A DNA stretch of 64,000 nucleotides, taken from IMG/VR virus record IMGVR_UViG_3300027668_000008, positions 124,001-188,000 of that record; one strand, written 5' to 3'. A program made the position numbers and the translations under genes. Of this stretch, positions 3,985-30,037 are shown piece by piece; position 1 is the stretch's first letter; every line of letters starts with the position of its first letter. Under the pieces are notes generated by a model, which was not told where the DNA came from, made no database searches, and was given only the letters and a program-made list of their open reading frames with translations.

Positions 3985-4061
3985 TGGCGCACCCTACAGG
4001 ACTCGAACCTATTACCTCTGGTTCCGCAAACCAACGCTCTATCCAGATGAGCTAAGGGTGC
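3985..4061 (-). tRNA. tRNA-Arg, anticodon GCG
   Basis: GCACCCT/AGGGTGC acceptor stem, A20, anticodon arm TTGGT-TTGCGGA-ACCAG, TTCGAGT T-loop, encoded CCA. Confidence 0.9.
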
Positions 4062-4072
4062 CTTTATAGTTT

Positions 4073-4148
4073 TGGTGGAGGATACAGGGATCGAACCTGC
4101 TACCTCCTGAATGCAAATCAGGCGCTCTCCCAGATGAGCTAATCCCCC
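4073..4148 (-). tRNA. tRNA-Ala, anticodon TGC
   Basis: GGGGGAT/ATCCTCC stem with G3:U70, arm CCTGA-TTTGCAT-TCAGG, encoded CCA. Confidence 0.95.
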
Positions 4149-4181
4149 AAAACTAAATTCTTTTTGTAACATACTAATACT

Positions 4182-4210
4182 ATAATATAACATTCAACGA
4201 GTGTTGTCAA
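4182..4210 (-). promoter_or_regulatory. sigma70-type promoter for tRNA-Ala/tRNA-Arg
   Basis: TTGACA-N17-TATTAT. Confidence 0.75.
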
Positions 4211-4222
4211 GAGCCATAAAAG

Positions 4223-4312
4223 TGGCGGAGAGACTGGGATTTGAACCCAGGAAAGAGTTGCCCCTTTGCCGGTTTAGTAAACCGGTGCTTTCAACCGCTC
4301 AGCCATCTCTCC
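4223..4312 (-). tRNA. tRNA-Ser (long variable arm), anticodon ACT
   Basis: GGAGAGA/TCTCTCC stem, G73, long variable arm AAAG-GGGCAACT-CTTT, arm CCGGT-TTACTAA-ACCGG, encoded CCA. Confidence 0.88.
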
Positions 4313-4321
4313 GGAGTATTT

Positions 4322-4525
4322 TTATTTAGGTACGATTTCAAAACACTTAACTAGTGCCTGCATATCAGTCAAACCAGCCGCTTTACATTCTGCGTATAAT
4401 TTCTTTCTAGCGCCGACTACTTCGTCTGGTGCTACTTTTATACTTTGCATCCTATTTGATTTTGCATTAGGATTCATGCCACGATATCTGGTATTATGTT
4501 TATTATTTTTGTTACGATCATTCAC
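4322..4525 (-). CDS. Small basic hypothetical protein between tRNAs
   Basis: 67-aa ORF, GTG start. Confidence 0.55.
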   Translation of the reverse strand: MNDRNKNNKHNTRYRGMNPNAKSNRMQSIKVAPDEVVGARKKLYAECKAAGLTDMQALVKCFEIVPK

Positions 4526-4541
4526 GCAATTTATTTTTCTG

Positions 4542-4617
4542 TGGTGCCGCTTCCCGGATTCGAACTGGGCACCTACTGATTACAAATCAGTTGCTCTACC
4601 AAATGAGCTAAAGCGGC
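4542..4617 (-). tRNA. tRNA-Thr, anticodon TGT
   Basis: GCCGCTT/AAGCGGC stem, arm ACTGA-TTTGTAA-TCAGT, encoded CCA. Confidence 0.95.
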
Positions 4618-7268: not shown

Positions 7269-8241
7269 CAATTGGTAAGAATTTCCATTGTAATACGTTA
7301 TTATCTTTACAATAGTCTTCAAACCTATGTCTAATTGCAACAACATTATCTGCACCATATTTAATTCTAGTTGGCAAGTATGTAAAGATATTAGAACGCC
7401 ATATGCTAGAACCAGGCTTTATCCAGGAAAAATCTTCTATAATATCCTTATTAAGGAATTCAACTGGAATAGATTCAAACCAATCCCAAAAATCTTCTCT
7501 GTCTATACTATCAGGTAACTGATTTAATACCGTTTCTTTATTGGTATAAATTTCTTTGTAGTACTCGATACTGTGTTTGCTTATATCATAAAACACAACT
7601 GTGTCAGGTATTACGTTATTTTTATAATATTCAGTTAATGTTATAAATGGTTTGTTACCAGCACACAATAAGTAAAGTGTTTTATCATAAGAGTAAAATT
7701 TATCGTATTGTTCTTTGCTACAATCTTTGTACACAGGTTCTGTGTTTTCCACATATAACCTATCTAAGTCTAAATTATAGTTGTGTTCGGTTTCCCAATC
7801 ATCATCAGTTTTGACAAATGTATCCAATCCAACTTCTTTAGAAAACCATTTTATTGTTGTATTAACAGGAACATCTTGTACAAACGTATCAGATCCTGAC
7901 ACAAACCAATCATGATTTAATCGTATAACAAAACAAAAACTATTCATGTTTTTAAATGCAATAATATCCGGTTCATCTTTAATTGCTTCTTTTACAAAAT
8001 CTAACATTAATTCGTTACGCAAATATGTACCTTCTCGAACGATAAGTGCGTAATCTGCCTTGTTTCTGAGGTTAGTAAGAGTACTGTCTAATGTACCAGT
8101 AATTTTAAATATATCAATATGTTCGTTATCTGCTACAGTATTATCATCTCTGATCAATCCCATATCAAATATGTTTGACCAAGTTATGTTGTGTAAGTAC
8201 TCGTCACTTGTACAATTTAATGCTACTGCTACTAAATTCAT
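7222..8241 (-). CDS. Hypothetical protein
   Basis: 339-aa ORF coupled to the upstream hydroxylase. Confidence 0.7.
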   Translation of the reverse strand: MNLVAVALNCTSDEYLHNITWSNIFDMGLIRDDNTVADNEHIDIFKITGTLDSTLTNLRNKADYALIVREGTYLRNELMLDFVKEAIKDEPDIIAFKNMNSFCFVIRLNHDWFVSGSDTFVQDVPVNTTIKWFSKEVGLDTFVKTDDDWETEHNYNLDLDRLYVENTEPVYKDCSKEQYDKFYSYDKTLYLLCAGNKPFITLTEYYKNNVIPDTVVFYDISKHSIEYYKEIYTNKETVLNQLPDSIDREDFWDWFESIPVEFLNKDIIEDFSWIKPGSSIWRSNIFTYLPTRIKYGADNVVAIRHRFEDYCKDNNVLQWKFLPIVKLQVLQEIQTIKQQ

Positions 8242-8864
8242 ATCAACTTCCTGTAGTTTTCATAAGCCTGTTTCTTAAACTCTGTAGTTTTGCCACCATG
8301 TAAAATAATATGATATCTATGTTCATTGCTATTATTACGAACACTGTGCTTGTTACTTAAATCTAACCATGCACCTTTATTTTGTTTAAATGGTACAACT
8401 CCGACATCCTCCATAACAAATTCACATCCTTCTGGATTGTTAATTGCAATGTTGATAGGACCTAATCTACTTTTATCATAATCTCTATGTGATTCAATAT
8501 AACCACCGGGTGCTACAGACATAATTCTAATTCTATCAAAGTCTATAAAATAATTTTGTTCTAACAACCATTGTTTAAGTGAAGGTATACTGTTACTTGC
8601 GTTAGTCCAATCAAAGACTGCATCTTCTTCTTGTATATCATAAAACATTGGAGCATTAGTGAATTCATCACCTTGCCCGTGCATAACTAATGATGACCAA
8701 CCTTTTGATTGGTCTTCTCTGTGATTATAAAAGTTATCTTGTGCTTGTGATATTTCTTGTAAAATATTTTCTACAGGCATATTGACATCGAACATTAAAT
8801 AAGGTAACTTACTATCTGTTCTTAATTCAATTGGATTTTTACATTCTTTGTTAAAACTTAACAT
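8238..8864 (-). CDS. Aspartyl/asparaginyl beta-hydroxylase-like 2OG-Fe(II) oxygenase
   Basis: IRIMSVAPGGYIESHRDY (HxD) and HSVRNNSNEHRYHIILHG; likely start ATG 8864 (ORF extends to 8927). Confidence 0.8.
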   Translation of the reverse strand: MLSFNKECKNPIELRTDSKLPYLMFDVNMPVENILQEISQAQDNFYNHREDQSKGWSSLVMHGQGDEFTNAPMFYDIQEEDAVFDWTNASNSIPSLKQWLLEQNYFIDFDRIRIMSVAPGGYIESHRDYDKSRLGPINIAINNPEGCEFVMEDVGVVPFKQNKGAWLDLSNKHSVRNNSNEHRYHIILHGGKTTEFKKQAYENYRKLI

Positions 8865-8883
8865 TTGTCGATTGTCTTTTCTT

Positions 8884-9021
8884 TTATTCTTGTTCGCCGT
8901 TTGCTTTACTTTTTGCGTAGGCGGCATCTGCTCTCATTTGTGTTGCTATTCGCAGTTGCATATAATCTCTTAAAGGTGGCTTAGTCTTTGGTTTATCTTT
9001 TCGTGCAGAACCCAGACTCAA
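8884..9021 (-). CDS. Possible 45-aa basic peptide (TTG start)
   Basis: Manual translation MSLGSARKDKPKTKPPLRDYMQLRIATQMRADAAYAKSKANGEQE fills the intergenic gap. Confidence 0.35.
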   Translation of the reverse strand: MSLGSARKDKPKTKPPLRDYMQLRIATQMRADAAYAKSKANGEQE

Positions 9022-9029
9022 CGAATCTT

Positions 9030-11063
9030 TTATTTGCTTGTTGCGATGAATACTCCGTCCCATTGTTTTGTACCTTTTCTTTTTAGCTCATGGGCCCGTT
9101 CAGACATTACTTCATAGTAATTATGAAGCTCTTCAGGGCATACACTTTGTAATTTGGAAATTTGATTAATCGCTAGATCCCACTTGGAATCTCTATATAA
9201 CTGCAAATATTTATCATGTTCCTTGACGTAATTAACTGCACACTCACTAAACAAAGCAGTATAAATGGTAGCCGGTACTGTCTTGCCCTTAACTGCTATT
9301 TTATCTAGTTCTATGAATGTGTATTCGTCGGATACTGAACTTTCACCAACTAACAATGTTAAACCGTACTCTTTACTTTGCCCCTCTAGTCTTGCCGCTA
9401 AATTAACACAATCACCCAAAACTGAGTAGTCAAAACGTTGATTAGACCCCATATTACCTACCACAGCACTACCTGTGTTAATACCAACACCAATTTTAAT
9501 AGGCATTAATCCTTCGGATTCTAATTCTTTATTAAGTTTTCTTAATGCAACAAACATCTCATCAGCAGTTTTAATTGCTAATTCACGTTGTTTAGGAACA
9601 TCTAAAGGTGCGTTCCAAAATGCCATAAGTGCATCACCAATATACTTGTCTACTGTGCCTTCGTTTTTCATAACAATATCTGTCATAGGTGTCATGTACC
9701 TATTAATTAAAGAAGTTAACCCTTGTGGATTTGTTTTGTATTGTTCACTAATAGGAGTAAATCCTCTAATGTCACTAAACAATAAAGTTAACTCTCTTGT
9801 ATCGCCACCTAACTTTAATAGTTCTGGATTTTGTTGTAATTTCTTAACCATAGCAGGTGCTAGATAGTGCTCAAACTGTTTTTTAATTTGTTGTTTTAAA
9901 CTAAACTCTTTTACAAATCTATTAAACACTGCATGAAAGCCTGTAAGTACAAATACTATTAATGGCATTGTTACATCGAGCAAATACAAATAGTGTTGCC
10001 ATGCATACAATGAACCATATACTAATCCTGCACTAACACTTAATATCGTAAGTCCAACAATATAATATGGTAATCTAACACTTATTAAAATAATAAGGAG
10101 ACCTAACGTAACAGAAGTTAGTAATTCAACTAGCACGGCCCAATACGGGCGTTGTATCTGGTCTCCGTCGATAACTGTTTGTAGTGTTACTGCCGAAGGT
10201 ATATAATTATATTTAGGACCAGTAGGTGTAGCAATTACTCCACCGATGCCTTCTGCTGTCGAACCTATAATAACTGTTTTGCCTGCGAATAAAGAAAAGT
10301 CGTCACTACTTGCACTAATTGTTTCAAACTCTTTATTCCAACGTAACCATATTTGTCCATTGGGATCTGTACTAATAATTGGATATCCCGGAACACGAAT
10401 TTTATCTATTCCGCCTTGGTTTGCTTTAATTTGATAACTTGGTTTACCTGTACTAACTCTAATAACTTCGATTGCTATTGATGGGTATGTGTTAGTGCCT
10501 ACTCTCATAATTAAAGGAACACGTCTTACAACACCATCTATCTCATTAGGTGTATTTAGAACACCAACGCCGTCTGCATTTAAGCCTAGTAACGGAATAG
10601 GTCCTAACATACCGGGCCATTCGAACAAATAAGGTACTGCATCACCTATTGTTGCAACTCCTCTTGTTACCGCATTTTTATTTACTTTTAAACTTCCTAC
10701 TTGTGCAATAACAATCCCATTGCCGGCTATCGATTCAACAAATGCTTGGTCACCGCCTAATCTATCATCTTCACTAAACAGTATAGGTATTACAATTACA
10801 CCTGCTCCTGCTTCACGCAACTTCCAAATAAGTTCTGCTAGAACATCACGTTTCCAGGGCCACTGTCCGTATTTTTCAATAGATGCTTCATCTATTGTTA
10901 CAATACCAATGTCGTTGGATACAACCGGAGTATCGGTTTGTTGTAGTAAATCAAACTGTTTAAGTCTCAATATTTCAACTATACTACTATTGCCGTAATG
11001 GAAGAAGGTTAGAACTGCCAATGTTACAAAGGCAGTTAACCAATGCGTTAAATATTTTTTCAT
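9030..11063 (-). CDS. CHASE2-domain class III adenylate cyclase
   Basis: N-terminal TM; CHASE2 motifs IDEASIEKYGQWPWKR and DGVVRRVPL; three TMs; catalytic LFSDIRGFT, DKYIGDALMAF, VGNMGS, DYSVLGDCVNLAARLEG, IAVKGK. Confidence 0.95.
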   Translation of the reverse strand: MKKYLTHWLTAFVTLAVLTFFHYGNSSIVEILRLKQFDLLQQTDTPVVSNDIGIVTIDEASIEKYGQWPWKRDVLAELIWKLREAGAGVIVIPILFSEDDRLGGDQAFVESIAGNGIVIAQVGSLKVNKNAVTRGVATIGDAVPYLFEWPGMLGPIPLLGLNADGVGVLNTPNEIDGVVRRVPLIMRVGTNTYPSIAIEVIRVSTGKPSYQIKANQGGIDKIRVPGYPIISTDPNGQIWLRWNKEFETISASSDDFSLFAGKTVIIGSTAEGIGGVIATPTGPKYNYIPSAVTLQTVIDGDQIQRPYWAVLVELLTSVTLGLLIILISVRLPYYIVGLTILSVSAGLVYGSLYAWQHYLYLLDVTMPLIVFVLTGFHAVFNRFVKEFSLKQQIKKQFEHYLAPAMVKKLQQNPELLKLGGDTRELTLLFSDIRGFTPISEQYKTNPQGLTSLINRYMTPMTDIVMKNEGTVDKYIGDALMAFWNAPLDVPKQRELAIKTADEMFVALRKLNKELESEGLMPIKIGVGINTGSAVVGNMGSNQRFDYSVLGDCVNLAARLEGQSKEYGLTLLVGESSVSDEYTFIELDKIAVKGKTVPATIYTALFSECAVNYVKEHDKYLQLYRDSKWDLAINQISKLQSVCPEELHNYYEVMSERAHELKRKGTKQWDGVFIATSK

Positions 11064-11068
11064 ACTAG

Positions 11069-11074
11069 TATTTA
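11069..11074 (-). promoter_or_regulatory. TAAATA late-type promoter box directly upstream of the cyclase
   Basis: TAAATA 6 nt before the ATG; the same box recurs before many genes. Confidence 0.6.
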
Positions 11075-11094
11075 TTTAAAGGAAATTTGGGGTG

Positions 11095-12549
11095 CTAATC
11101 TGATTGTGTAAAGGTCGTTGTTCCACAACCAGCGGCATTAGTGCAACTTTGTGTTAAACTATATGTCTTATCTGAACTACCATCTTGGTGTAAATCCAAT
11201 GTACTTGAATACCCAGACATATTAATTGTTGCGGCATGGTCGCCTGATCCATCTTGGTCAACTGAAACAGTTTGGTTACTTCCAACTGTAATGTCTTGAA
11301 AGTGTGTTCCTGTTCCGGCTTGGTCTAAATCTAATGTGTTAGAACTTCCGTTAATATCCACAAACATCATTTTATCGCCATCGTCATTTTGTTGTAAATT
11401 TATATTGTTACTATTTCCTGCAATGTCGACATCCATAAAATGACCCAAGTTACCAACGGCTCCGTCTTCTTCTTGAGTGAAAGTTCCTGTATTACTATTA
11501 CCAACTACATTTAATCTTAAATCATGGTCACCATCATCATCGATATTGTCACCTTGTCGTATTGTCATAGTGTTACTATTTCCGTTAATATCTAGCAAAA
11601 CAGTATTGCCATCACTAAATGATCCTGAGTTATTACCCTGTGTAATTGATAGTGTATTATCGTCGCCAGTTATTTCTGCGTTGTCGATACTGCTGGAAGT
11701 TGTTCCTAAACCTGCAACTAAATTATCATTGTCGTATTGTATAATGTCTATGTTTGCATTATTACCACTTTGTGTAATATAAATTCCGTTGCCACTGTGT
11801 GTTATTCCTCTTGTAGTTGATCTTAAATTAGTTTGTGCAGTTGTAGGTTCTGAAGTATATGATGCTGGACTGAATACGCCTTCCTCTTCAAGTGTTTCTC
11901 CTAAAAAGACATACATTCTTGCTGAACGAGTTGTGTTAGCATTATTAAATTGTGCCTGGTCTAAAGTGATAATTAATTTACCACCATTACTACCATAACC
12001 ATATACTGCCCAAGATTTCCAGCCACTAAGGCCTGATGCTGTATTTGACGCTATCGCCGTACCACCCGATTGCATTGAAAAAAGATTTCTTGTTACCCAT
12101 GAATTTGAAACGGTATATTGAGAACCATTAGCGTGAGAAGTATAGTTTGCCTCACCATTGTATATTGAGATAGCACCTACACTTAATTTACTTTCAACAA
12201 GCGATTCAATGCTCAGCGTTCTAGCGCCATCATGGTCACCATTACCAGCAATTAAAACTGTGCCACCTGCACTAATGTAAGTTTCATATGCTGTCTTACA
12301 GGTACCACCACAACTGTTATTACCTGCTATGTTAATGTGTAAATCTTTACCAGTAAAATCACTTAAAGTAACTGAACCACTATTTGTGCCTGTAACTGTA
12401 AACCCATGACCCTCTAACTCACCTTTTACTTTATTGTACATATTGGTATCAGTATAGTTTATATGAGCTGTTTCGGCAAATGCTTGTATAGGTAATACTA
12501 ATAATAAACTAATTAGACTGATTAATAGTGATCTGATTAACACCGGCAT
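11095..12549 (-). CDS. Large secreted protein: N-terminal globular domain plus C-terminal curlin-like repeats
   Basis: Signal peptide; repeats of type I-x-G-x-x-N-x-x-x-I-x-Q (ITGDDNTLSITQ, INGNSNTMTIRQ, VVGNSNTGTFTQ, IAGNSNNINLQQ, INGSSNTLDLDQ). Confidence 0.8.
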   Translation of the reverse strand: MPVLIRSLLISLISLLLVLPIQAFAETAHINYTDTNMYNKVKGELEGHGFTVTGTNSGSVTLSDFTGKDLHINIAGNNSCGGTCKTAYETYISAGGTVLIAGNGDHDGARTLSIESLVESKLSVGAISIYNGEANYTSHANGSQYTVSNSWVTRNLFSMQSGGTAIASNTASGLSGWKSWAVYGYGSNGGKLIITLDQAQFNNANTTRSARMYVFLGETLEEEGVFSPASYTSEPTTAQTNLRSTTRGITHSGNGIYITQSGNNANIDIIQYDNDNLVAGLGTTSSSIDNAEITGDDNTLSITQGNNSGSFSDGNTVLLDINGNSNTMTIRQGDNIDDDGDHDLRLNVVGNSNTGTFTQEEDGAVGNLGHFMDVDIAGNSNNINLQQNDDGDKMMFVDINGSSNTLDLDQAGTGTHFQDITVGSNQTVSVDQDGSGDHAATINMSGYSSTLDLHQDGSSDKTYSLTQSCTNAAGCGTTTFTQSD

Positions 12550-13600
12550 CTCCTAACTGTACATTATCTACACCAACAAAATTCTGCTTTAATGTTATGT
12601 TATAACTGTAATCTCTATCTAATCGTAGTTCCATAAAATTACCTGCACTATCTTCTTTAATAATAAGGTAACTAGGATCGTTTGTAAATGTTATTCCTGT
12701 TGTTTCGTCGAATCCAATTTTAAAACCATTCCTAGGATCAAATGCTTGTTTAAGTTTTTTGCTTAATTCTGCATTTAATACGACTAGTAAGTCTTGTAAA
12801 AAATCTTGTAATAAGAAGTCAATGTCTAATTCGTTTGCAAGTTCCTCATTTGATTCTTCTAATAAATCTTCATCTAAATCGTTAAATTCTAAAAAGTCAA
12901 TATCTAATGCACTTGATACATCTGATAGTTGCTCTGCTAGTTCTATTGCTTCTTGTAAATCCTTGGGCTTTTGTACGATTAACAAGTTGTTAATCATATT
13001 AGCATCTAAATCCAGTATAATAGGTTTTAAAGGTTTAGATTCAAATGTTGTAACTACTGTTGTTTGAAATGCTTGATTCATTATAACAAATCCTGCATCT
13101 GTTTCAACTTCAATTTCTCCTACATAACAGTTGCCGTTGCTATCGCAACTCGGTAGTAAAATTATAAGACTGCTTCCAATCTCATCTACTGTCATCGTGA
13201 AGTCAGTGCCTCTTACTCCAATGACTGCCGTAGGTGTTTTGATCTTTACATTTTGTTTAAACTTTTTTCCTATTTGCCCACTTGCATACCTAACTGTGCC
13301 TAAACTGGCTTTGATAGATAGTGATCCAATATCATTTGCAGGGTCATAGACAAATTCATCGATTATTACATTACTGTGTGGCGTAATTTCTAATTTAGTA
13401 TCGTCTATAAATTCTATATTTTGTTTATGCTTAAATGTTTCTATTCGGTCCATAGAGAATATATCAGAATCCACATCACCTTGTTCAGTTGTGTCTTCTC
13501 TATAAATCTTACTTGGTCCGTCCGATTTAGTAATTTTACCTATACTGGCAAATCCACTAGTCGGAAGAAAGCAGATTAGTATAACACAGAGCCACTTCAT
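12509..13600 (-). CDS. Secreted FecR-domain protein
   Basis: Signal peptide; FIDDTKLEITPHSNVIIDEF, GTVRYASG, IKTPTAVIGVRGTDF. Confidence 0.85.
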   Translation of the reverse strand: MKWLCVILICFLPTSGFASIGKITKSDGPSKIYREDTTEQGDVDSDIFSMDRIETFKHKQNIEFIDDTKLEITPHSNVIIDEFVYDPANDIGSLSIKASLGTVRYASGQIGKKFKQNVKIKTPTAVIGVRGTDFTMTVDEIGSSLIILLPSCDSNGNCYVGEIEVETDAGFVIMNQAFQTTVVTTFESKPLKPIILDLDANMINNLLIVQKPKDLQEAIELAEQLSDVSSALDIDFLEFNDLDEDLLEESNEELANELDIDFLLQDFLQDLLVVLNAELSKKLKQAFDPRNGFKIGFDETTGITFTNDPSYLIIKEDSAGNFMELRLDRDYSYNITLKQNFVGVDNVQLGDAGVNQITINQSN

Positions 13601-14292
13601 TAGTCGCTCTGCGTAATGTCTATGTCAGAATTGGTGCCAACTGTTGTTAATTGTATTTTGTTGTCATAAATTCCACTTTGTGTAATGTCCACTGTAGTAC
13701 CTTCACCTGTATGATTATGTGTTAAACTATGTCCTGCACTATCTCCTGCGCCTGACATTATATAGTTCGCCGTGTTATCTACTGAACTGCCTAATGCATC
13801 ATTATCCATATCGATGTCTGCATCTGCGTTCGCGGCATTTACTGTTAGTGTGATAGTATCTTCGTTGCTAGTTGCTAAATCTATTGTTCCTACAAAGTTA
13901 GCCGATGATGCACTGGCTCCAATAGCAACTGTTACTGTTGCGTCATCGCCGACTACATCTATGCTCATACTTACTGTTTCACAATTAGAACTTGCACAAG
14001 TTAAAGCAACTGTGTTAGAGTTACCTGTTAAATCTATATTACCTGTGTAAGTAGTACCGTTAATAACTGTAGACACAACGTTACTGTTACCAACTTGATC
14101 AATATTAAATGTCATGCTGTTACCAGTTAAGGATATCGCTGTACTGCTGTTACCTGCCACGTTGTTCTGTCCGTCCTGTGTTATATCCAAGTTTAAATTA
14201 TTACCACTTTGTGTAATATAGATATCATTAGCATACACCGAACTTATAGAACAAACCAGAAACAAGAGCACATAAACTATTTTATTTGTCAT
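13600..14292 (-). CDS. Secreted curlin-like repeat protein
   Basis: Signal peptide then NDIYITQSGNNLNLDITQDGQNN; Gly/Asn/Gln beta-solenoid repeats. Confidence 0.8.
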   Translation of the reverse strand: MTNKIVYVLLFLVCSISSVYANDIYITQSGNNLNLDITQDGQNNVAGNSSTAISLTGNSMTFNIDQVGNSNVVSTVINGTTYTGNIDLTGNSNTVALTCASSNCETVSMSIDVVGDDATVTVAIGASASSANFVGTIDLATSNEDTITLTVNAANADADIDMDNDALGSSVDNTANYIMSGAGDSAGHSLTHNHTGEGTTVDITQSGIYDNKIQLTTVGTNSDIDITQSD

Positions 14293-15355
14293 TTATTTTC
14301 TCCGTCTGTTTCTGCCCTTTTAGTTTAGTTAACGTTTCCCATAGATACATATCAGCAGTGTTTTTAAAACAGTTGCCTCCTGCATTGCAAACGTTAAAGT
14401 CATCTCCCGGTGCTCCTTTTAGCATTTCACTTTCGTGCATAGTTGGGATTGAGTTAATGTCCGGTTTAGAAATAGGCACAGATTTTAATTTAGAACTTTG
14501 GAGAGTCGTATTTTTATCATCTGTATTAATTACTTCACCGGACTTATGGATTAACTTCGTAGTTTTTTGTGTCGTTTTCTTAAACTTCCACAAGCCCTTG
14601 ATTTCGCCTTCTTTGACGATCTCGACAATAGCCTGCTCAATAGCAAGTCTAACTGCCTGATTGGTAGGTTCATTAACTGCTGAACCTATCTCAATTTCTA
14701 ATGCTCTTGTACCTAAATCTAAAAATCTAAATACATCTGAGCTATCTTTATAACTTGCAATAGTCTTATCAACTGCAACCGACAGTAGTATTTCACCAGT
14801 TGATACACTAATAATTCTCATTGCCACAGATACTCTATCTGTTCTGTATTCTTTTGATGCTCCAATACCAAAGTATCTTGCACCTACACCGCCACTTTCA
14901 ATGTTGCTATCGTAACCTATAATAGCACCATCTAATAATAGTCCAGCAAATAACATAGGTTGTAATGCTAGTGCATCTTTACCTTCAAAATTTTCTCTTG
15001 TGCTTCTTATTAATTGTCTTTCTTTTACCAACGAGTCTAAACTAACACGTTCTAATACCTTAAACCATTTACCGCCTCCGGCTTGTTGCAATGCACGAAT
15101 CACATGACTCTCTGCACCTTGCGTTACTGCGGTACTTAATTGACTAAAATTTGTTGAAGGTTTACGTTGTCCTGTTTTATCTCCAAAGCCGTATAGTGCT
15201 ATGGTAATAATAGGTCCGTCGATTGGTGGTAAGTTTAGAAGTGCATTAACCCCTATTGGTATCGAAGCAGGTGGGTCGTATCTGACTTGCTTTACAGGGT
15301 TACCTGCACAAGCACCTAGTAACAATATGATGGATAATGCTACAAATATCCTCAT
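14282..15355 (-). CDS. csgG: Curli secretion channel CsgG (lipoprotein) with C-terminal extension
   Basis: Lipobox LLLGAC; FGDKTGQRKP, STAVTQGA, WFKVLERVSLDSLVKERQLIR, GAIIGYDSN, GVGARYFGIGA, GEILLSV. Confidence 0.95.
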   Translation of the reverse strand: MRIFVALSIILLLGACAGNPVKQVRYDPPASIPIGVNALLNLPPIDGPIITIALYGFGDKTGQRKPSTNFSQLSTAVTQGAESHVIRALQQAGGGKWFKVLERVSLDSLVKERQLIRSTRENFEGKDALALQPMLFAGLLLDGAIIGYDSNIESGGVGARYFGIGASKEYRTDRVSVAMRIISVSTGEILLSVAVDKTIASYKDSSDVFRFLDLGTRALEIEIGSAVNEPTNQAVRLAIEQAIVEIVKEGEIKGLWKFKKTTQKTTKLIHKSGEVINTDDKNTTLQSSKLKSVPISKPDINSIPTMHESEMLKGAPGDDFNVCNAGGNCFKNTADMYLWETLTKLKGQKQTEKINDK

Positions 15356-15358
15356 CCA

Positions 15359-15808
15359 TTAAAACCCGAAGCCACTTAATGGCACCACTAGTTCACTAAA
15401 TGAACCATCGGCTTCAGTTATCTGTACAGTAATTGTACTCGAAGATGTATCTTTAATCCAGTATATAGTTGCACCTTCGACAGTTGCAGTACCACTATTG
15501 GCACCAGTGTCAGAAAACATACTATCAACTAAATTTTTGGATAAGTTTGCGTAAATTCTTGATTCAACGTTTGCTAAGAATTTTGAAAGAGTTTCTTGGG
15601 CGGCATCTCTAACTGCTTGTCTTTCAGCCGCTTCTTTGGCTTTCTTTATTTCAGCCGCACGTTGGAATTGGAGTTGCTCTATACTTAAGACGTGTGTACT
15701 ATAACCTTTTCCACTAAAGGAAGGATTTTTAAATTCATGTGTTAAGTCGCTGGCGTATGCAGGCGTCATAACGAACATAGTCAAGGCTATAGTGATAAAA
15801 AATTTCAT
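15359..15808 (-). CDS. csgF: Curli assembly component CsgF
   Basis: Signal peptide then SDLTHEFKNPSFSG; ITVQITEADGSFSELVVP; directly upstream of csgG. Confidence 0.88.
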   Translation of the reverse strand: MKFFITIALTMFVMTPAYASDLTHEFKNPSFSGKGYSTHVLSIEQLQFQRAAEIKKAKEAAERQAVRDAAQETLSKFLANVESRIYANLSKNLVDSMFSDTGANSGTATVEGATIYWIKDTSSSTITVQITEADGSFSELVVPLSGFGF

Positions 15809-15828: not shown

Positions 15829-15836
15829 TATTTATA
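15829..15836 (-). promoter_or_regulatory. TATAAATA late promoter of the csgF-csgG operon
   Basis: Exact T4 late consensus about 20 nt upstream of csgF. Confidence 0.7.
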
Positions 15837-15906: not shown

Positions 15907-15968
15907 GGTATAGTAAGACGTTATTATACTGGACGGTAGTTTATAGCCCTTTACTACCGTCCTTTTAT
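15907..15968 (+). ncRNA. Candidate small RNA (hairpin plus terminator hairpin)
   Basis: TAAATA at 15897; hairpin GTATAGTAA-GACG-TTATTATAC; hairpin GGACGGTAGT/ACTACCGTCC followed by TTTT; no plus-strand ORF. Confidence 0.45.
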
Positions 15969-16205
15969 TTCTAAAACTTTCATTCTAGCAATGAGACGTG
16001 TTCTTCCCACACCCAAATATCTACTCGCGGCGGCAACTGACTTGTGCATTGTTAACGCCTCAGTTATCTCACTGGTTTCAATTTGTTTAAGTTTGTCTGG
16101 GAGGGTAGTGTCAAGGGATTCAATAGCAGAGCCTGGTGCTCCCCATATGTCGTCCATCATTTCGAACAGTACTGTCTGTTCATTTGTGAAAACGCCCTTG
16201 TTCAT
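15954..16205 (-). CDS. Stand-alone Fis-type HTH protein
   Basis: ITEALTMHKSVAAASRYLGVGRTRLIARMK matches the Fis/NtrC C-terminal HTH; ATG 16205 below TATAAATA 16211-16218. Confidence 0.75.
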   Translation of the reverse strand: MNKGVFTNEQTVLFEMMDDIWGAPGSAIESLDTTLPDKLKQIETSEITEALTMHKSVAAASRYLGVGRTRLIARMKVLEIKGR

Positions 16206-16253
16206 ACTAGTATTTATATACCGCATAAACAAAGGCGTTTCTAAGTGGTTCTG

Positions 16254-17188: not shown

Positions 17189-18328
17189 TTACTCGCCTAT
17201 AGTTGAATTTTCATAGACTGTATTTAATTGATTTGCTACTTGAATAAATGTAGCACACTTCGAAAGTCGCTTTAACTTATTTGCTCCAACGTAAGTGCAG
17301 GCACTTCTGATGCCTCCTAGAATGTCTTGAATAGTTATGTCTACATCTCCGCGATAAGGTACTAGTGCAGTACGTCCTTCGCTACTACGGTAGTCTTTTA
17401 AGCCACTAAAGTGTTTTTCGTTGGCTGTTTTAGAACTCATACCGTAGAATTGCACAAACTTCTTTTCTTCTATCTTTCTAGTTGTACCAGTTGACATTTC
17501 ATTAGTCATATATTTTTTAGTAATTACTTCGCCACCGCCTTCATTATGTCCTGCTAACATACCGCCAAGCATAACAAAATCTGCTCCTCCGGCAAAAGCC
17601 TTAGCAACATCACCCGGGCAAGTACAGCCACCATCAGCAATGATATGTCCACCTAATCCGTGGGCCGCATCAGCACATTCCATAACTGCTGAAAGTTGAG
17701 GATATCCAACACCAGTTTTAAGTCTAGTAGTACAAACACTGCCAGGACCAATACCAACTTTAACAATATCGGCTCCATTTAATATCAATTCCTGTGTTTG
17801 GTCTGCCGTAACTACGTTACCGGCAATAATAACAATTTCTGGATAACTTTTCCTAAACGCACTAATAAAGTCTAAAAAGCGTTCACTATACCCGTTTGCT
17901 ACATCAATACAAACATATTTTAATTTGTTACCTGTTTGCTCGTATACATCACGAAACTTTTGTTGGTCGTGGTCTAAAATTCCTATGCTCATTGCTACAT
18001 TATTACTACGTTCGTTACCTTCTACGTCAAAGTAACTTACTAGTTCTGTAACTGTGTAAGTTTTAACTAGACAGGTAAAAATTCTTTGTTTTGCTAACTT
18101 ATCAGCCATAGCAAGTGTGCCAACACCGTCCATGTTTGAAGCCATAAGTGGTATGCCTTTAAAGTCGCCATGCTCTGAACGTCTATTTAATCCTGGTTCG
18201 CTTGGCTTATAATGACGATAAGTAAACCTACGGTGTAAATCTACTTCTTTCCGTGAACCCAATGTACTACGTTTAGGTCTCATTAATACACTAGCATAAT
18301 CTAGTTTGATATCTGATTCTATTCTCAT
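17189..18328 (-). CDS. guaC: GMP reductase
   Basis: PLMASNMDGVGT, CIDVANGYSE, IIAGNVVT, VKVGIGPGSVCTTR, ADGGCTCPGDVAKAF, FYGMSS, YRSSEG. Confidence 0.95.
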   Translation of the reverse strand: MRIESDIKLDYASVLMRPKRSTLGSRKEVDLHRRFTYRHYKPSEPGLNRRSEHGDFKGIPLMASNMDGVGTLAMADKLAKQRIFTCLVKTYTVTELVSYFDVEGNERSNNVAMSIGILDHDQQKFRDVYEQTGNKLKYVCIDVANGYSERFLDFISAFRKSYPEIVIIAGNVVTADQTQELILNGADIVKVGIGPGSVCTTRLKTGVGYPQLSAVMECADAAHGLGGHIIADGGCTCPGDVAKAFAGGADFVMLGGMLAGHNEGGGEVITKKYMTNEMSTGTTRKIEEKKFVQFYGMSSKTANEKHFSGLKDYRSSEGRTALVPYRGDVDITIQDILGGIRSACTYVGANKLKRLSKCATFIQVANQLNTVYENSTIGE

Positions 18329-19041
18329 TTTATTATCTCAATCCTTGGTGATAAATGTTTAGGTTGAAAACCTAATTTCTTCATATATGTAATGTCGGCT
18401 AATGTGTGTTGTCTTTCATGTGGCGTGTGTAATTTAATTGGTAAGTCGGGTGCATAATCTCTAACTTGCACACTATTACCCGATCCAATATCAATACACC
18501 CTATAACATCGGGATTAGTAACTAGTATCCAAATTGCATCTAAACAATCATCCATGTGTATAAAATCTCTAGTATGATTTGTTACATATTCTAATGTTTT
18601 ATTTTTTAACTTATCAAAAAACATTCCTTCTCTTGGTACATCCGAATATACAGTATGAAATCGCATACCAACTGTAAAAGGATAAGATGCTCCTAAGAAT
18701 TCCAAACAATGTTTGGAAGCCGCATACGGATTTAAATGTGGTTCATATTGTGAGCTCGAACTTGCATAAAGAATTCGTTTGCCTTTATACTTGTCAAATA
18801 AGCGTCTACTGGCTTCAATGTTATTCAACCAATAACTTGTTGGGTCTGCTAAACTTTGTCTTACTCCACTTTTACCTGCTAAATGTATAACAATGTCTAC
18901 AGTATGAGGTTCAGGCAGTTCACAATCCAGTAAATCGTTACCATCTTGTTTGTCGATACCTATTACATTATGAAAATCTCCAAGACGTTTTGTTAACTGA
19001 GATCCAATAAAACCTTTGTGTCCTGTTATTAGAATATTCAT
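18325..19041 (-). CDS. NAD-dependent epimerase/dehydratase (short SDR)
   Basis: ILITGHKGFIGS, IHLAG, YASSSS, YAASK, RDFIHMDD. Confidence 0.9.
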   Translation of the reverse strand: MNILITGHKGFIGSQLTKRLGDFHNVIGIDKQDGNDLLDCELPEPHTVDIVIHLAGKSGVRQSLADPTSYWLNNIEASRRLFDKYKGKRILYASSSSQYEPHLNPYAASKHCLEFLGASYPFTVGMRFHTVYSDVPREGMFFDKLKNKTLEYVTNHTRDFIHMDDCLDAIWILVTNPDVIGCIDIGSGNSVQVRDYAPDLPIKLHTPHERQHTLADITYMKKLGFQPKHLSPRIEIIK

Positions 19042-19574
19042 CGGGTTATTCCAAAATGTTTAAAGGACTGCTGAACACACTTTGCTTGATAATAACAATC
19101 TGCCAAGGCGTTGTGAGCATCTGTTTGTATTGCTTTACGAGGATCTACAGGCATCATACTAAACAATGTTCTACTATCTCGCACTTGCCAGAAGTTCCAT
19201 GGAATAGGTTGTTTCATCTGTCTATATAAATTTTCTAATATAACCATATCGAATGCAGGACCTTGACACCAAATTTGATCACAGCCAATTAACCATTTGT
19301 TAAGTTGTGCTAATGTATCTGCAACACTTGTGCGATTTTCATCACCTAATGCTTCGTCTTGAATTTCTTTCTTTTGTTTGCCCCACCACTCGAGTGTTCC
19401 AGGATCCACACTACGATTCATAGTAGATTGTTCATCTACATCTAAACGTAAATATAAACCTTTTGCAGGTTCTTCATTATTATATGGATTAAATTTTATT
19501 CCACCCAGTGTAAGTACTGTGCAGTCTGGTTGAGTGCCTAGTGTTTCTAGGTCAATCATTGCGTGTGTTGACAT
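19038..19574 (-). CDS. DEDDh 3'-5' exonuclease (DexA/Rv2179c-like)
   Basis: MIDLETLG, WCQGPAFD, VRDSRT, HNALADC. Confidence 0.9.
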   Translation of the reverse strand: MSTHAMIDLETLGTQPDCTVLTLGGIKFNPYNNEEPAKGLYLRLDVDEQSTMNRSVDPGTLEWWGKQKKEIQDEALGDENRTSVADTLAQLNKWLIGCDQIWCQGPAFDMVILENLYRQMKQPIPWNFWQVRDSRTLFSMMPVDPRKAIQTDAHNALADCYYQAKCVQQSFKHFGITR

Positions 19575-26340: not shown

Positions 26341-26479
26341 AAAATTACTTGGTACTTTTTATATATCTGTATATAGTTCGTCACGTTCACTGAAACGTGT
26401 GCAATTAGAAAGTGTATTTCCATGTTACCAGTGTATGCTTGTAACAATCCTTTGTCACTAATGTTTCTAACTTTGGTAT

Positions 26480-26745
26480 ATGCAACGATTTCTGTTGCTA
26501 GGTACGTTGCCAACCCCCACGTGCTTATTTTACTAAGCCGCTAATGCCATTTCTGGCTGATAATTGTTATTTGCAATTATAAAGTTTCTTCGCGATAACG
26601 GTGCTTAGATCCCGAGAACTCCACTAACTCTAGTAATTACCTGTCGATCCTATTCATCCCCATATGAAAAATCTGTTGTATTTGGTGGAGATGCCGGGAT
26701 TCGCACCCGGGTCCAGTTTAACTTTTGAATTGCTTCAACGTTCTA
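26480..26745 (-). ncRNA. ssrA: Circularly permuted two-piece tmRNA (alphaproteobacterial type), tag ANNNYQPEMALAA
   Basis: Acceptor piece ends with T-arm and CATCTCCACCA at 26683; 21-nt spacer; coding piece starts GGGGATGAATAGGATCGAC at 26661 (G3:U70); tag ORF 26574-26533; CCTAGCAACAGAA near the 3' end. Confidence 0.93.
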
Positions 26746-26749
26746 AGTA

Positions 26750-26780
26750 TATTTATACACTATTCACTTGACTTTGTCAA
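26750..26780 (-). promoter_or_regulatory. Hybrid sigma70 / late promoter of tmRNA
   Basis: TTGACA-N17-TATAAA, where the -10 is part of TATAAATA. Confidence 0.8.
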
Positions 26781-26865
26781 CCAAATAATATACAAATAAA
26801 GTACTAATATTAAAAATAAAAGATAAGTATTCTATAAAAGCAAAATACATCAACTAAAGGTAATT

Positions 26866-28640: not shown

Positions 28641-28898
28641 CTATCCTATTTTTGATCCACCTGTGCCATTATAGCCAGTGTTTTCGATGTATTCTAATAA
28701 TTGGTCGTATCCGCCGATTTTGTCTTTATATACTTTAATCTGCGGAAATGTTCTTGCTCCCGGAAACTCTTCCATTACATCTTCTCTTTGAAAGTCTGTT
28801 CCCAACTGTTTGTATACAAACTCGTATCCACGTTGCTCACATAATGCTTTTGCTTTTGTGCAACTTGGACAAGCAGGTTTGCCCCATATTTCTATCAT
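28641..28898 (-). CDS. nrdC: Glutaredoxin (NrdC-like)
   Basis: CPSC, ARTFPQI, IGGYDQL; follows nrdB. Confidence 0.93.
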   Translation of the reverse strand: MIEIWGKPACPSCTKAKALCEQRGYEFVYKQLGTDFQREDVMEEFPGARTFPQIKVYKDKIGGYDQLLEYIENTGYNGTGGSKIG

Positions 28899-30013
28899 AA
28901 ACTAAATCCCTTAAATGTATCTGTGTCAACGTCTTGTTTAGTACCGCCGGTTACATAAGAACTAATCTCTGTTTCTTGTGGTGCTACTTGTACTTCTGCT
29001 CCACTAATCCAATTTTGTGTCCAAGGTAACGGGTTACTTCCACCTTTATAAGGACTAGTCAATCCAACTGCTAACATACGTTTATGTGCAGTCCATTCAA
29101 CATAGTCTTTTAGTAATTGTGCATTAAGACCAATCATACTGCCATCTTTAAACAAATACTCGGCCCATGCACTTTCTTGTTCAACTGCTTCAACAAACAT
29201 CTTTTCACACTCTTCTTTTGTTTCTTCTGCAATCTTAATAAAGTCTTTATCATCTTTTGGAAGGATCTTTAACAATGCTTGTGTACTTGCCAAGTGTACG
29301 TTTTCATCACGGCAAATAAATTTGATAATTTTTGCATTGCCTTCCATTTTTTTAAGTTCTGCAAATGCCCAACTACAGGCAAAAGAAACATAAAAACGAA
29401 TTCCTTCTAATATGTTAACACTGTTAATTGCTAACCATAATTTTTTCTTTAGTTCATATAAGTCTACTTCAACTTTTTTACCATTAACTGTATGTGTTCC
29501 TTCACCCATTAGTTGGTATGCTAAACTTAACTGAATAAGATCATCATAGTTCTTACTAATGTCATCAGCACAATCTGTAATTTCTGAAATGTCCATCATC
29601 TCGTCAAAGATTTTACTTGGATCGCTATAGATATTACGGATAATATGTGTATAACTACGTGAGTGAATTGTTTCACTAAATGTCCAAGTTTGAACCCATG
29701 CTTCTAATTCAGGGATACTAATTAACGGACCAAATGCTTCAGTAGGTGCTCTACCTTGTACACTGTCTAGCAAGATTTGTCTTTTAAGATTACTTGTAAA
29801 GATGTGTTGTTCATGTGGTGTCAAATCTTTAAAATCTTTACTATCTTTACCAATGTCAACTTCTTCAGGTCTCCAAAAGAATCCTAGTTGTTTATCTGTA
29901 AACTTGTCAAATTGTCTATACTTAACGGCATCATACCTTTGTATATTAACACCGCCGTCTAAGAAGGCTTTGCTTTCAAGGTGATTTCGTTTCTCATTAC
30001 TGAATACTGTCAT
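28895..30013 (-). CDS. nrdB: Class Ia ribonucleotide reductase beta subunit
   Basis: FFWRPEEVD, ILLDSVQGR, ETIHSRSY, LEGIRFYVSF, RDENVH, VAPQETEISSY. Confidence 0.97.
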   Translation of the reverse strand: MTVFSNEKRNHLESKAFLDGGVNIQRYDAVKYRQFDKFTDKQLGFFWRPEEVDIGKDSKDFKDLTPHEQHIFTSNLKRQILLDSVQGRAPTEAFGPLISIPELEAWVQTWTFSETIHSRSYTHIIRNIYSDPSKIFDEMMDISEITDCADDISKNYDDLIQLSLAYQLMGEGTHTVNGKKVEVDLYELKKKLWLAINSVNILEGIRFYVSFACSWAFAELKKMEGNAKIIKFICRDENVHLASTQALLKILPKDDKDFIKIAEETKEECEKMFVEAVEQESAWAEYLFKDGSMIGLNAQLLKDYVEWTAHKRMLAVGLTSPYKGGSNPLPWTQNWISGAEVQVAPQETEISSYVTGGTKQDVDTDTFKGFSL

Positions 30014-30037
30014 TTTATTTTATCTCTCCGTATCTAT

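What the first reader, a model, noticed from the sequence alone, without database searches (positions are those of the whole stretch)
9030..11074. Phage cyclase looks catalytically intact, ATP-specific and late-expressed
Both metal Asp residues (SDIRG, GDA), the ATP-selecting Lys (DKY) and Asp (FDYS), and the transition-state Asn/Arg (VNLAAR) are all present. A TAAATA box sits 6 nt from the start. No CRP-like effector is in the window, so the cAMP would act on host Clr/CRP or on a phage target elsewhere.
Basis: partly seen in the sequence, partly recalled or inferred. Interest (0 to 1): 0.6.

Follow-up and report, generated by a model that had tools for sequence, protein, structure and literature searches.

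The report
Receptor adenylate cyclase in phage curli cassette
The gene is an intact membrane-bound sensor adenylate cyclase, the last gene of a "curli secretion + FecR" cassette already described in marine phages, here found in a jumbo phage; what its cAMP acts on is still unknown.

Summary
The ORF (window 9030-11063, minus strand, 677 aa) is real. It has a CHASE2 periplasmic sensor, four membrane helices, a class III cyclase domain and a short helical tail. Both metal Asp (D431, D477), the purine Lys (K473) and the transition-state Asn/Arg (N554, R558) are present. That gives a class IIIb-type K/S pair, identical to 20 alphaproteobacterial homologues, so ATP to cAMP remains the best call.

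The cyclase is the last gene of CsgF-CsgG-curlin-FecR-curlin-AC, a cassette published for pelagiphages (PMC9599517) and annotated in HTVC008M and Melnitz.

New here:
- The host genome is a roughly 307 kb jumbo phage of the PA5oct/PBECO4 type.
- An ATAAATA late-promoter box sits exactly 5 nt before the ATG and is conserved in relatives, which suggests a leaderless late mRNA.
- The phage record has no cNMP-binding, GAF or Crp-HTH domain and no CRP/Clr box enrichment.
- Only 2 of 61 SAR11-family genomes have a cNMP-binding domain.

Verdict: a new member of a known kind. The late timing and the cAMP target are untested.

The parts
9030..11063 (-). CHASE2-receptor class III adenylate cyclase, 677 aa
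   Evidence: ORF; Pfam CHASE2 + Guanylate_cyc; phrog_35576 full length, E 1e-229
11069..11075 (-). ATAAATA late-promoter-like box, 5 nt before the cyclase ATG, inside the 31-nt gap after the upstream gene
   Evidence: conserved in L002, L011, L081, L084 and as TAAATA in L003, L010, L013
10095..11021 (-). CHASE2 periplasmic sensor domain (aa 15-323), preceded by membrane helix 1 (aa 6-23)
   Evidence: Pfam; helices in the AF2 model; the CHASE2 core is poorly modelled
9909..10139 (-). Membrane helices 2-4 (aa 309-385), running into the conserved helical linker before the cyclase
   Evidence: hydropathy; AF2 helices 309-330, 333-358, 365-397
9273..9797 (-). Class III cyclase catalytic domain (aa 423-597): D431, K473, D477, S547, N554, R558
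9069..9236 (-). C-terminal three-helix tail (aa 610-665); conserved in bacterial homologues, absent from the HTVC008M-type cyclase
   Evidence: AF2 pLDDT about 90; bacterial matches run to residue 677; the HTVC008M match ends at 601
11095..12549 (-). Secreted protein: N-terminal globular part plus C-terminal curlin-like repeats (second CsgA/B-like gene)
   Evidence: Curlin_rpt 20.2 bits, just under the cut-off; signal peptide by eye; syntenic in relatives
12509..13600 (-). Secreted FecR-domain protein
   Evidence: Pfam FecR; phrog_37870 E 2e-112; 7641 relatives at E<=1e-10 among 8000 candidates scored
13600..14292 (-). Curlin-repeat protein (first CsgA/B-like gene)
   Evidence: weak Curlin_rpt; 44-48% identical to the annotated curlin proteins of Melnitz and HTVC008M
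14282..15355 (-). CsgG outer-membrane channel lipoprotein
   Evidence: Pfam CsgG E 1e-49; lipobox by eye
15359..15808 (-). CsgF
   Evidence: Pfam CsgF E 3e-14
15829..15835 (-). ATAAATA box before CsgF, followed by GGAG and a 20-nt spacer (ordinary leadered late promoter of the cassette)
15954..16205 (-). 83-aa Fis-type HTH protein just upstream of the cassette, with its own ATAAATA + 5 nt + ATG box at 16211-16217
   Evidence: HTH_8 23.5 bits; same gene at the same place in L084; box

Best explanation
The gene encodes a receptor-type adenylate cyclase. An N-terminal membrane helix is followed by a periplasmic CHASE2 sensor, three more membrane helices, a helical linker, a class III (IIIb-type, Lys/Ser) catalytic domain that works as a homodimer, and a short helical tail.

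It is the terminal gene of a phage-borne envelope cassette: CsgF, CsgG, curlin-like protein, FecR-domain protein, second curlin-like protein, cyclase. The five proteins before it all carry signal peptides.

In the infected cell the cyclase would sit in the inner membrane, with CHASE2 facing the compartment through which the cassette's secreted proteins pass. By analogy with S. meliloti CyaD1, where removing CHASE2 gives constitutive cAMP, the sensor keeps the enzyme off until a periplasmic or envelope cue arrives. The FecR-domain protein or the state of the curli-type secretion apparatus may relay that cue. The enzyme then converts ATP to cAMP in the cytoplasm.

The gene has a T4-type late box (ATAAATA) exactly 5 nt before its ATG and no Shine-Dalgarno sequence. 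It is therefore probably transcribed late by the phage's gp55-type sigma factor as a leaderless mRNA, in addition to read-through from the late box before CsgF.

Shown: architecture, intact catalytic residues, cassette membership, the box and its conservation.
Inferred: cAMP as product, late timing, leaderless start, the input signal.
Unknown: the receptor of the cAMP.
For: Architecture.

Catalytic residues: they are invariant in relatives, and the motif is identical to 20 alphaproteobacterial full-length homologues. S547 aligns with Thr of the adenylate cyclase CyaB and with Gly of the guanylate cyclase Cya2, and K473 aligns with Glu of Cya2. The fold matches CyaC and CyaB.

Cassette. The same order is found in HTVC008M and Melnitz. 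Every one of the 11 other loci with upstream flank carries the cassette genes in that order ahead of the cyclase, and 7 of them the whole cassette from CsgF on. It is published as a T8SS + FecR + AC module (PMC9599517).

CHASE2 autoinhibition and FecR-domain neighbours: CyaD1 lacking CHASE2 is constitutive, with smc02177 (FecR domain) nearby (PMC5498481). FecR + CHASE2-kinase operons occur in Burkholderia and Pseudomonas (PMC5192318). Three of 20 alphaproteobacterial loci have a FecR neighbour.

Late box: depletion and upstream enrichment; a gp55-like sigma factor; the box stands before the portal, baseplate-wedge and tail genes; it is conserved before the cyclase in relatives even where the upstream gene differs. 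TATAAAT is the accepted late motif in Melnitz (PMC9004378).

RNA libraries: short metatranscriptome contigs, 97-100% identical, lie on the cyclase and the other cassette genes.
Against: There is no enzyme assay for any phage member.

In S. meliloti the FecR-domain neighbour was not needed for signal perception by CyaD1; it is a Clr target. The FecR-relay idea therefore rests on gene neighbourhood only. Only 3 of 20 bacterial loci pair the two genes, and the complex prediction could not be run. The CHASE2 core is poorly modelled.

Seven of 15 AC starts examined, the window's included, lack the box. The major capsid gene has no box within 70 nt.

The RNA evidence consists of contigs, which cannot show transcript starts or timing, and DNA carry-over is possible.

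No cAMP receptor was found in the phage.
Confidence: 0.6

Rival explanations
1. One reading: the phage-made cAMP takes over the host by loading a host CRP/Clr-family regulator.
For: The closest studied system, S. meliloti CyaD1/D2/K, signals through the Crp-family regulator Clr. The host of this jumbo phage is unknown and could have such a regulator.
Against: Only 2 of 61 sampled SAR11-family genomes have a cNMP-binding domain, and 2 of 61 a class III cyclase. Cassette-bearing phages infect SAR11. The phage genome has no perfect CRP core site (0.7 expected) and no Clr-box excess (27 against 22 +/- 3).
Confidence: 0.2
2. The gene is not late-specific. It is simply co-transcribed with the cassette, and the ATAAATA before the ATG is an AT-rich translation-start context or a chance match.
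For: The gap to the upstream gene is only 31 nt. No terminator lies inside the cassette. About half of the relatives lack the box. Upstream regions are AT-rich.
Against: Five ORFs carry the exact 5-nt spacing against 0.34 expected (Poisson p 3e-5), and none of the other 20 A5T2 permutations exceeds 3. The box is kept in L081 even though the upstream gene is different. The word is otherwise avoided in the genome.
Confidence: 0.25
3. The enzyme makes another cyclic nucleotide (cGMP, or cCMP/cUMP as in Pycsar defence cyclases).
For: PADLOC PycC models match the catalytic domain (best E 1e-27). The best PDB sequence matches include the guanylate cyclase Cya2.
Against: Cya2 has Glu and Gly where this protein has Lys and Ser. 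No effector gene with a cNMP-binding domain lies nearby or anywhere in the record. The active-site motif equals that of the alphaproteobacterial CHASE2 cyclases, whose studied member yields cAMP. The PycC hits reflect the shared class III fold.
Confidence: 0.07
4. The cyclase has no signalling role: it is an ATP drain or a decaying passenger of the transferred cassette.
For: No receptor was found. According to PMC9599517, the cyclase is absent from many podophage cassettes.
Against: All catalytic residues are invariant across relatives of 57-85% identity, and the full length is conserved. Phage cyclases form one well-supported clade, which implies long retention.
Confidence: 0.05

Closest known systems
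Adenylate cyclase of the pelagiphage T8SS (curli) module: HTVC008M gp019, Melnitz gp104 (PMC9599517; GenBank NC_020484, MZ577097)
   Same: Same domain order, same position as the last gene after FecR and the second curlin gene, and 50-51% identity. The phage cyclases form one clade. The late box stands before the ATG in Melnitz.
   Different: The carrier here is a roughly 307 kb jumbo phage whose capsid protein is 59-65% identical to PA5oct/PBECO4-type phages and only 32% to HTVC008M. HTVC008M lacks the C-terminal tail. Melnitz has the derived Lys/Asp + Ser active site, while the window keeps the ancestral Lys/Ser + Asn.
Sinorhizobium meliloti CyaD1 (SMc02176), a CHASE2 receptor adenylate cyclase
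   Same: CHASE2 + class III cyclase, with a FecR-domain gene in the neighbourhood. Loss of CHASE2 makes it constitutive. Alphaproteobacterial homologues of the window protein are 33-44% identical over the full length.
   Different: CyaD1 is bacterial, is linked to Clr (a Crp-family regulator) and has no curli genes nearby. Its FecR-domain neighbour was not required for signal perception. I did not align CyaD1's own sequence.
Class IIIb adenylate cyclases with solved structures: P. aeruginosa CyaB (3r5g), Spirulina CyaC (1wc0)
   Same: Same fold (TM 0.80-0.86, rmsd 2.0-2.5 A) and 35-38% identity. Lys plus a hydroxyl residue at the two specificity positions.
   Different: Ser instead of Thr. The sensor is CHASE2. 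From my own knowledge, CyaB has a MASE2 membrane module and the crystallised CyaC is a soluble fragment.
FecR-domain protein + CHASE2 histidine kinase operon of Burkholderia and P. aeruginosa (PMC5192318)
   Same: A secreted FecR-domain protein is encoded next to a CHASE2 membrane sensor.
   Different: The output there is a histidine kinase, not a cyclase, and the FecR protein carries LysM.

Membership tests
Class III nucleotidyl cyclase (PF00211) | Catalytic-domain profile match and fold | tested here: met
   70 bits against a cut-off of 21.9; Foldseek matches to CyaC, CyaB and Cya2 with TM 0.80-0.86
Class III nucleotidyl cyclase (PF00211) | Two metal-binding Asp, transition-state Asn and Arg | tested here: met
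   D431, D477, N554 and R558. D431, D477 and R558 are invariant in 44 relatives
Class IIIb adenylate cyclase | Lys at the first specificity position and Thr/Ser (not Asp) at the second, 7 residues before the Asn | tested here: met
   K473 and S547. S547 aligns with Thr of CyaB. The residue spacing rule comes from my own knowledge of CyaC and mammalian AC numbering
Class IIIb adenylate cyclase | cAMP as product (and CO2/bicarbonate response in some members) | not testable with these tools
   Needs an enzyme assay
CHASE2 receptor cyclase (CyaD1 type) | CHASE2 domain between membrane helix 1 and a three-helix membrane block, with a cytoplasmic cyclase | tested here: met
   Pfam CHASE2 E 9e-42; helices
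CHASE2 receptor cyclase (CyaD1 type) | CHASE2 holds the enzyme off | not testable with these tools
   Known only for CyaD1
Phage T8SS/curli + FecR + AC module (PMC9599517) | Gene order CsgF, CsgG, CsgA/B-like, FecR, (CsgA/B-like), AC on one strand | tested here: met
Phage T8SS/curli + FecR + AC module (PMC9599517) | The cyclase groups with phage cyclases, not bacterial ones | tested here: met
   Quick ML tree: 14 phage rows form one clade against 20 bacterial rows, SH-aLRT 100. The careful search was not finished
T4-type late gene | TATAAATA-like box upstream, and a gp55-type sigma factor in the genome | tested here: met
   Box at 11075-11069; late sigma phrog_12791 E 5.5e-62
T4-type late gene | Transcript appears late and depends on replication | not testable with these tools
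   Only metatranscriptome contigs were available
Pycsar cyclase (PycC) | Adjacent effector with a cNMP-binding domain | tested here: not met
   No PADLOC hit for the neighbours; no PF00027 in the whole record

The most novel reading that the evidence does not exclude
The cyclase is the output of a phage-private envelope-to-cytoplasm circuit. CHASE2, with the secreted FecR-domain protein, reads the state of the phage's own curli-type secretion apparatus or of the host envelope. The resulting cAMP acts on a non-canonical receptor, in hosts such as SAR11 that have essentially no cAMP signalling of their own, to time late events such as lysis or fibre export. The gene would be expressed from a leaderless late mRNA, a gene-start arrangement shared by at least seven genes of this phage.
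Probability: 0.2. Interest if true: 0.7.

Novelty: new member of a known kind. Interest (0 to 1): 0.35.

Why it matters
Phages carrying this cassette infect some of the most abundant bacteria in the sea, and the cassette proteins are very common in marine metagenomes.

A sensor cyclase at the end of the cassette means that the phage brings both a second messenger and an envelope sensor into cells that mostly lack cAMP signalling. Finding the receptor would say what the puzzling phage curli genes are for.

The practical gain here is a sharper set of testable statements: product, sensor autoinhibition, late leaderless start, and the missing receptor. The finding itself (an intact phage cyclase) is not new.

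Tried and rejected
- Nucleotide search of the region against cultured phages: no match.
The pairing was therefore not tested.
- AF2 of the full cyclase: the CHASE2 core came out at low confidence, so no fold search of that part is meaningful. AF2 of the FecR-like protein: only aa 20-110 are confident, and I did not pursue it.
- Genome-contig scan for cellular carriers of the close family: all 16 loci lie in metagenome bins of mutually discordant taxonomy, on contigs of at most 50 kb (most under 12 kb), and carry the phage cassette. I read them as mis-binned phage DNA, not as hosts.
- Curli genes near bacterial homologues: none within +/-8 kb in 20 alphaproteobacterial loci.
- Host inference from the tmRNA: only 74-75% identity over about 70 nt to SAR11 genomes, which is uninformative. 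No psbA, so probably not a cyanophage. The host remains unknown.
- Sigma-70 promoter and terminator scans of the cassette: no more than in shuffles.
- CRP and Clr box counts: at chance level.
- Metatranscriptome contigs: they show presence in RNA libraries only. X17 and X18 gave identical pieces and count as one.
- Pycsar membership: rejected (see the membership test).
- The large representative-protein search was not used, because the family was already clear.
Full report
**What is at the coordinates**

The window is bases 124001-188000 of a 306,714-bp IMG/VR virus record that CheckV rates 87% complete. At 9030-11063 on the minus strand lies a 677-codon ORF. The frame is open for only four more codons upstream, so the ATG is fixed.

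Pfam finds a CHASE2 domain (aa 15-323, E 9e-42) and a class III cyclase domain (aa 423-597, E 3e-19). Hydropathy and the AlphaFold model give this layout:
- one membrane helix before CHASE2 (aa 6-23);
- three after it (309-330, 333-358, 365 onward);
- a helical linker;
- the catalytic domain;
- a confident three-helix tail (aa 612-663).

With Lys-Lys at the N-terminus, this places CHASE2 in the periplasm and the cyclase in the cytoplasm. The topology is inferred.

**Catalytic residues**

D431 and D477 are the metal ligands. K473, four residues before D477, is the purine-selecting Lys. N554 and R558 are the transition-state pair.

The second specificity position lies seven residues before that Asn. 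This is the spacing of D1018/N1025 in mammalian cyclase and T1139/N1146 in CyaC, which I cite from my own knowledge.

The PDB alignments agree. S547 pairs with Thr of the P. aeruginosa adenylate cyclase CyaB (3r5g) and with Gly of the guanylate cyclase Cya2 (2w01). K473 pairs with Glu of Cya2. The enzyme is therefore a class IIIb-type Lys/Ser cyclase, and ATP remains the expected substrate.

In 44 relatives of 57-85% identity, D431, K473, D477 and R558 never change. The modelled catalytic domain superposes on CyaC and CyaB with TM 0.80-0.86 and rmsd 2.0-2.5 A. All 20 full-length alphaproteobacterial homologues I fetched carry the same K/S/N/R active-site residues, in a nearly identical motif.

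**Context**

The cyclase is the last of six co-oriented genes:

| Gene | Window coordinates |
|---|---|
| CsgF | 15359-15808 |
| CsgG | 14282-15355 |
| curlin-repeat protein | 13600-14292 |
| FecR-domain protein | 12509-13600 |
| second protein with curlin-like repeats | 11095-12549 |
| cyclase | 9030-11063 |

The first five all start with signal peptides, and CsgG has a lipobox (by eye).

The same cassette in the same order stands in Pelagibacter phage HTVC008M (gp014-019) and Methylophilales phage Melnitz (gp99-104). Both records annotate the last gene as an adenylate/guanylate cyclase, and it is 50-51% identical to this one. The cassette genes also precede the cyclase, in the same order, in every other locus I recovered that has upstream flank. 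In L081 a radical SAM gene replaces the second curlin gene.

**Prior work**

- Zaragoza-Solas et al. 2020 and Buchholz et al. 2022 discuss the curli genes but never mention the cyclase.
- Wittmers et al. 2022 (PMC9599517) describe the full module, including FecR and 'an adenylate cyclase catalyzing cyclic AMP production'. They build an AC tree and report metatranscriptome hits.

The object is therefore known. That paper's main text does not mention CHASE2 (0 hits), and in the passages I read it does not examine the catalytic residues, the promoter or the question of a receptor.

**The carrier phage**

HTVC008M core proteins match this record only distantly: capsid 32%, terminase 33%, portal 31%, polymerase 26%. 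The cassette proteins match at 42-56%.

The capsid protein is 59-65% identical to those of PA5oct, PBECO4-like, Vibrio 2.275.O and Sinorhizobium Phosso jumbo phages. None of these has the cyclase.

An independent 68-kb JGI contig (L084, cyclase 82% identical) shows the same flanking genes on both sides, so the placement is not an assembly chimera.

In a quick maximum-likelihood tree the phage cyclases form one clade against the 20 bacterial ones (SH-aLRT 100). The window sequence is sister (91) to the Melnitz-type group. The careful tree search was not finished. I read this as a further transfer of the cassette between phage lineages, into a jumbo phage.

**Late expression**

Upstream of the ATG the minus strand reads ATAAATA, then five bases, then ATG, with no Shine-Dalgarno sequence. 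This sits within a 31-nt gap after the previous gene.

Genome-wide evidence that the box is meaningful:
- The word is the rarest of the 21 permutations of its letters (77 copies on both strands against a median of 158).
- 37 copies lie within 45 nt upstream of 376 crudely called ORFs. Shuffles give 13.2 (maximum 23), and the word is 20-fold enriched upstream, on a par with the ribosome-binding words.
- It precedes the portal, a baseplate-wedge-like gene and a tail protein gene.
- The record encodes a gp55-type late sigma factor (phrog_12791, E 5.5e-62).

There are two spacing classes. Most boxes lie 19-32 nt from the ATG with a GGAG in between, as before CsgF at 15835. Seven ORFs have the box 4-6 nt from the ATG, five of them at exactly 5 nt against 0.34 expected (Poisson p 3e-5).

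In T4, transcription starts about six bases after the box (my own knowledge). That would put the start on the A of the ATG, giving a leaderless mRNA.

The arrangement recurs before the cyclase in relatives:
- exact ATAAATA + 5 nt + ATG in Melnitz, L011, L081 (where the box overlaps the stop codon of a different upstream gene) and L084;
- TAAATA in HTVC008M, L010 and L013;
- absent in seven other loci.

The late reading is therefore well motivated. No data here show timing. The metatranscriptome evidence is short contigs (150-465 nt, 97-100% identical) over the cyclase and the other cassette genes, from three studies.

**Where the cAMP could act**

The whole record has no cNMP-binding domain, no GAF domain and no Crp-type HTH. 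It has no perfect CRP core site, and Clr-type boxes are at chance level.

Through the genome that holds the mis-binned locus L015 (titled Candidatus Pelagibacter), I sampled its family. Two of 61 genomes have a cNMP-binding domain and two of 61 have a class III cyclase. The known SAR11 hosts of cassette-bearing phages thus mostly lack canonical cAMP signalling.

The host of this jumbo phage is unknown. It carries an alpha-type permuted tmRNA, but this resembles SAR11 tmRNAs only weakly.

**The sensor input**

- In S. meliloti, the CHASE2 cyclase CyaD1 becomes constitutive when CHASE2 is removed. A FecR-domain gene (smc02177) lies nearby, yet that gene was not needed for signal perception.
- Burkholderia and P. 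aeruginosa pair a secreted FecR-domain protein with a CHASE2 histidine kinase.
- Among 20 alphaproteobacterial loci, three have a FecR neighbour, three have a GAF + HD protein, and none has curli genes.

The FecR/CHASE2 pairing is thus recurrent but not obligatory.

**Verdict**

The object is a new member, in a new viral lineage, of a published phage module.

Noticed in passing
window 9405-9425 (aa 547-553 region of the cyclase); L002, L007, L010, L016-L018: The phage cyclase family has two active-site versions. The window, HTVC008M and all 20 bacterial homologues have Asp-Tyr-Ser ... Asn. Melnitz and five metagenomic loci have Ser/Gly-Tyr-Asp ... Ser, meaning a canonical Lys/Asp pair but Ser in place of the transition-state Asn. 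In my sample the second version is seen only in phage sequences and forms one clade.
   Followed up: partly
window 11075, 16217, 23447; G000 24454, 67505, 103418 (+), 205188 (+): Seven ORFs have ATAAATAC + 3-5 nt + ATG with no ribosome-binding site. This suggests a class of leaderless late mRNAs in this phage.
   Followed up: partly
window 26442-26799 (-): A permuted (two-piece) alphaproteobacterial-type tmRNA (RF01849, 107 bits; tag ANNNYQPEMALAA), as reported for Melnitz and relatives.
   Followed up: partly
window 3985-4617 (-): A cluster of four tRNA genes: Arg-GCG, Ala-TGC, Ser-ACT, Thr-TGT.
   Followed up: no
window 15954-16205 (-): An 83-aa Fis-type HTH protein lies directly upstream of CsgF and is conserved at the same place in L084. 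It is a candidate regulator of the cassette. In podophages a histidine kinase occupies this position (PMC9599517).
   Followed up: partly
window 8238-8927 (-): An Asp/Asn beta-hydroxylase-like 2OG oxygenase lies right after the cyclase. The same neighbour is present in L084.
   Followed up: no
L057-L075 (alphaproteobacterial loci): Three of 25 ORFs just upstream of bacterial CHASE2 cyclases are GAF + HD (HD_5) proteins. These are plausible cAMP-responsive partners, and the phage has nothing like them.
   Followed up: no
L081 8934-9992: In a 71%-identical relative a radical SAM gene replaces the second curlin-like gene before the cyclase. The late box is kept and overlaps that gene's stop codon.
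   Followed up: partly
window 17189-19574 (-): IMPDH/GMP-reductase-like, NAD-epimerase and Rv2179c-like exoribonuclease genes lie upstream of the cassette and are syntenic in L084. Class Ia ribonucleotide reductase at 28895-32356 is 51-52% identical to HTVC008M's, far above the core genes.
   Followed up: no
L007-L022 (genome contigs): Cassette-bearing contigs are filed in bins named Legionellales, Flavobacteriaceae, Pirellulales, Rhodobacteraceae, Chitinophagales, Pelagibacter and Verrucomicrobiaceae. This looks like phage DNA mis-binned into bacterial MAGs.
   Followed up: partly
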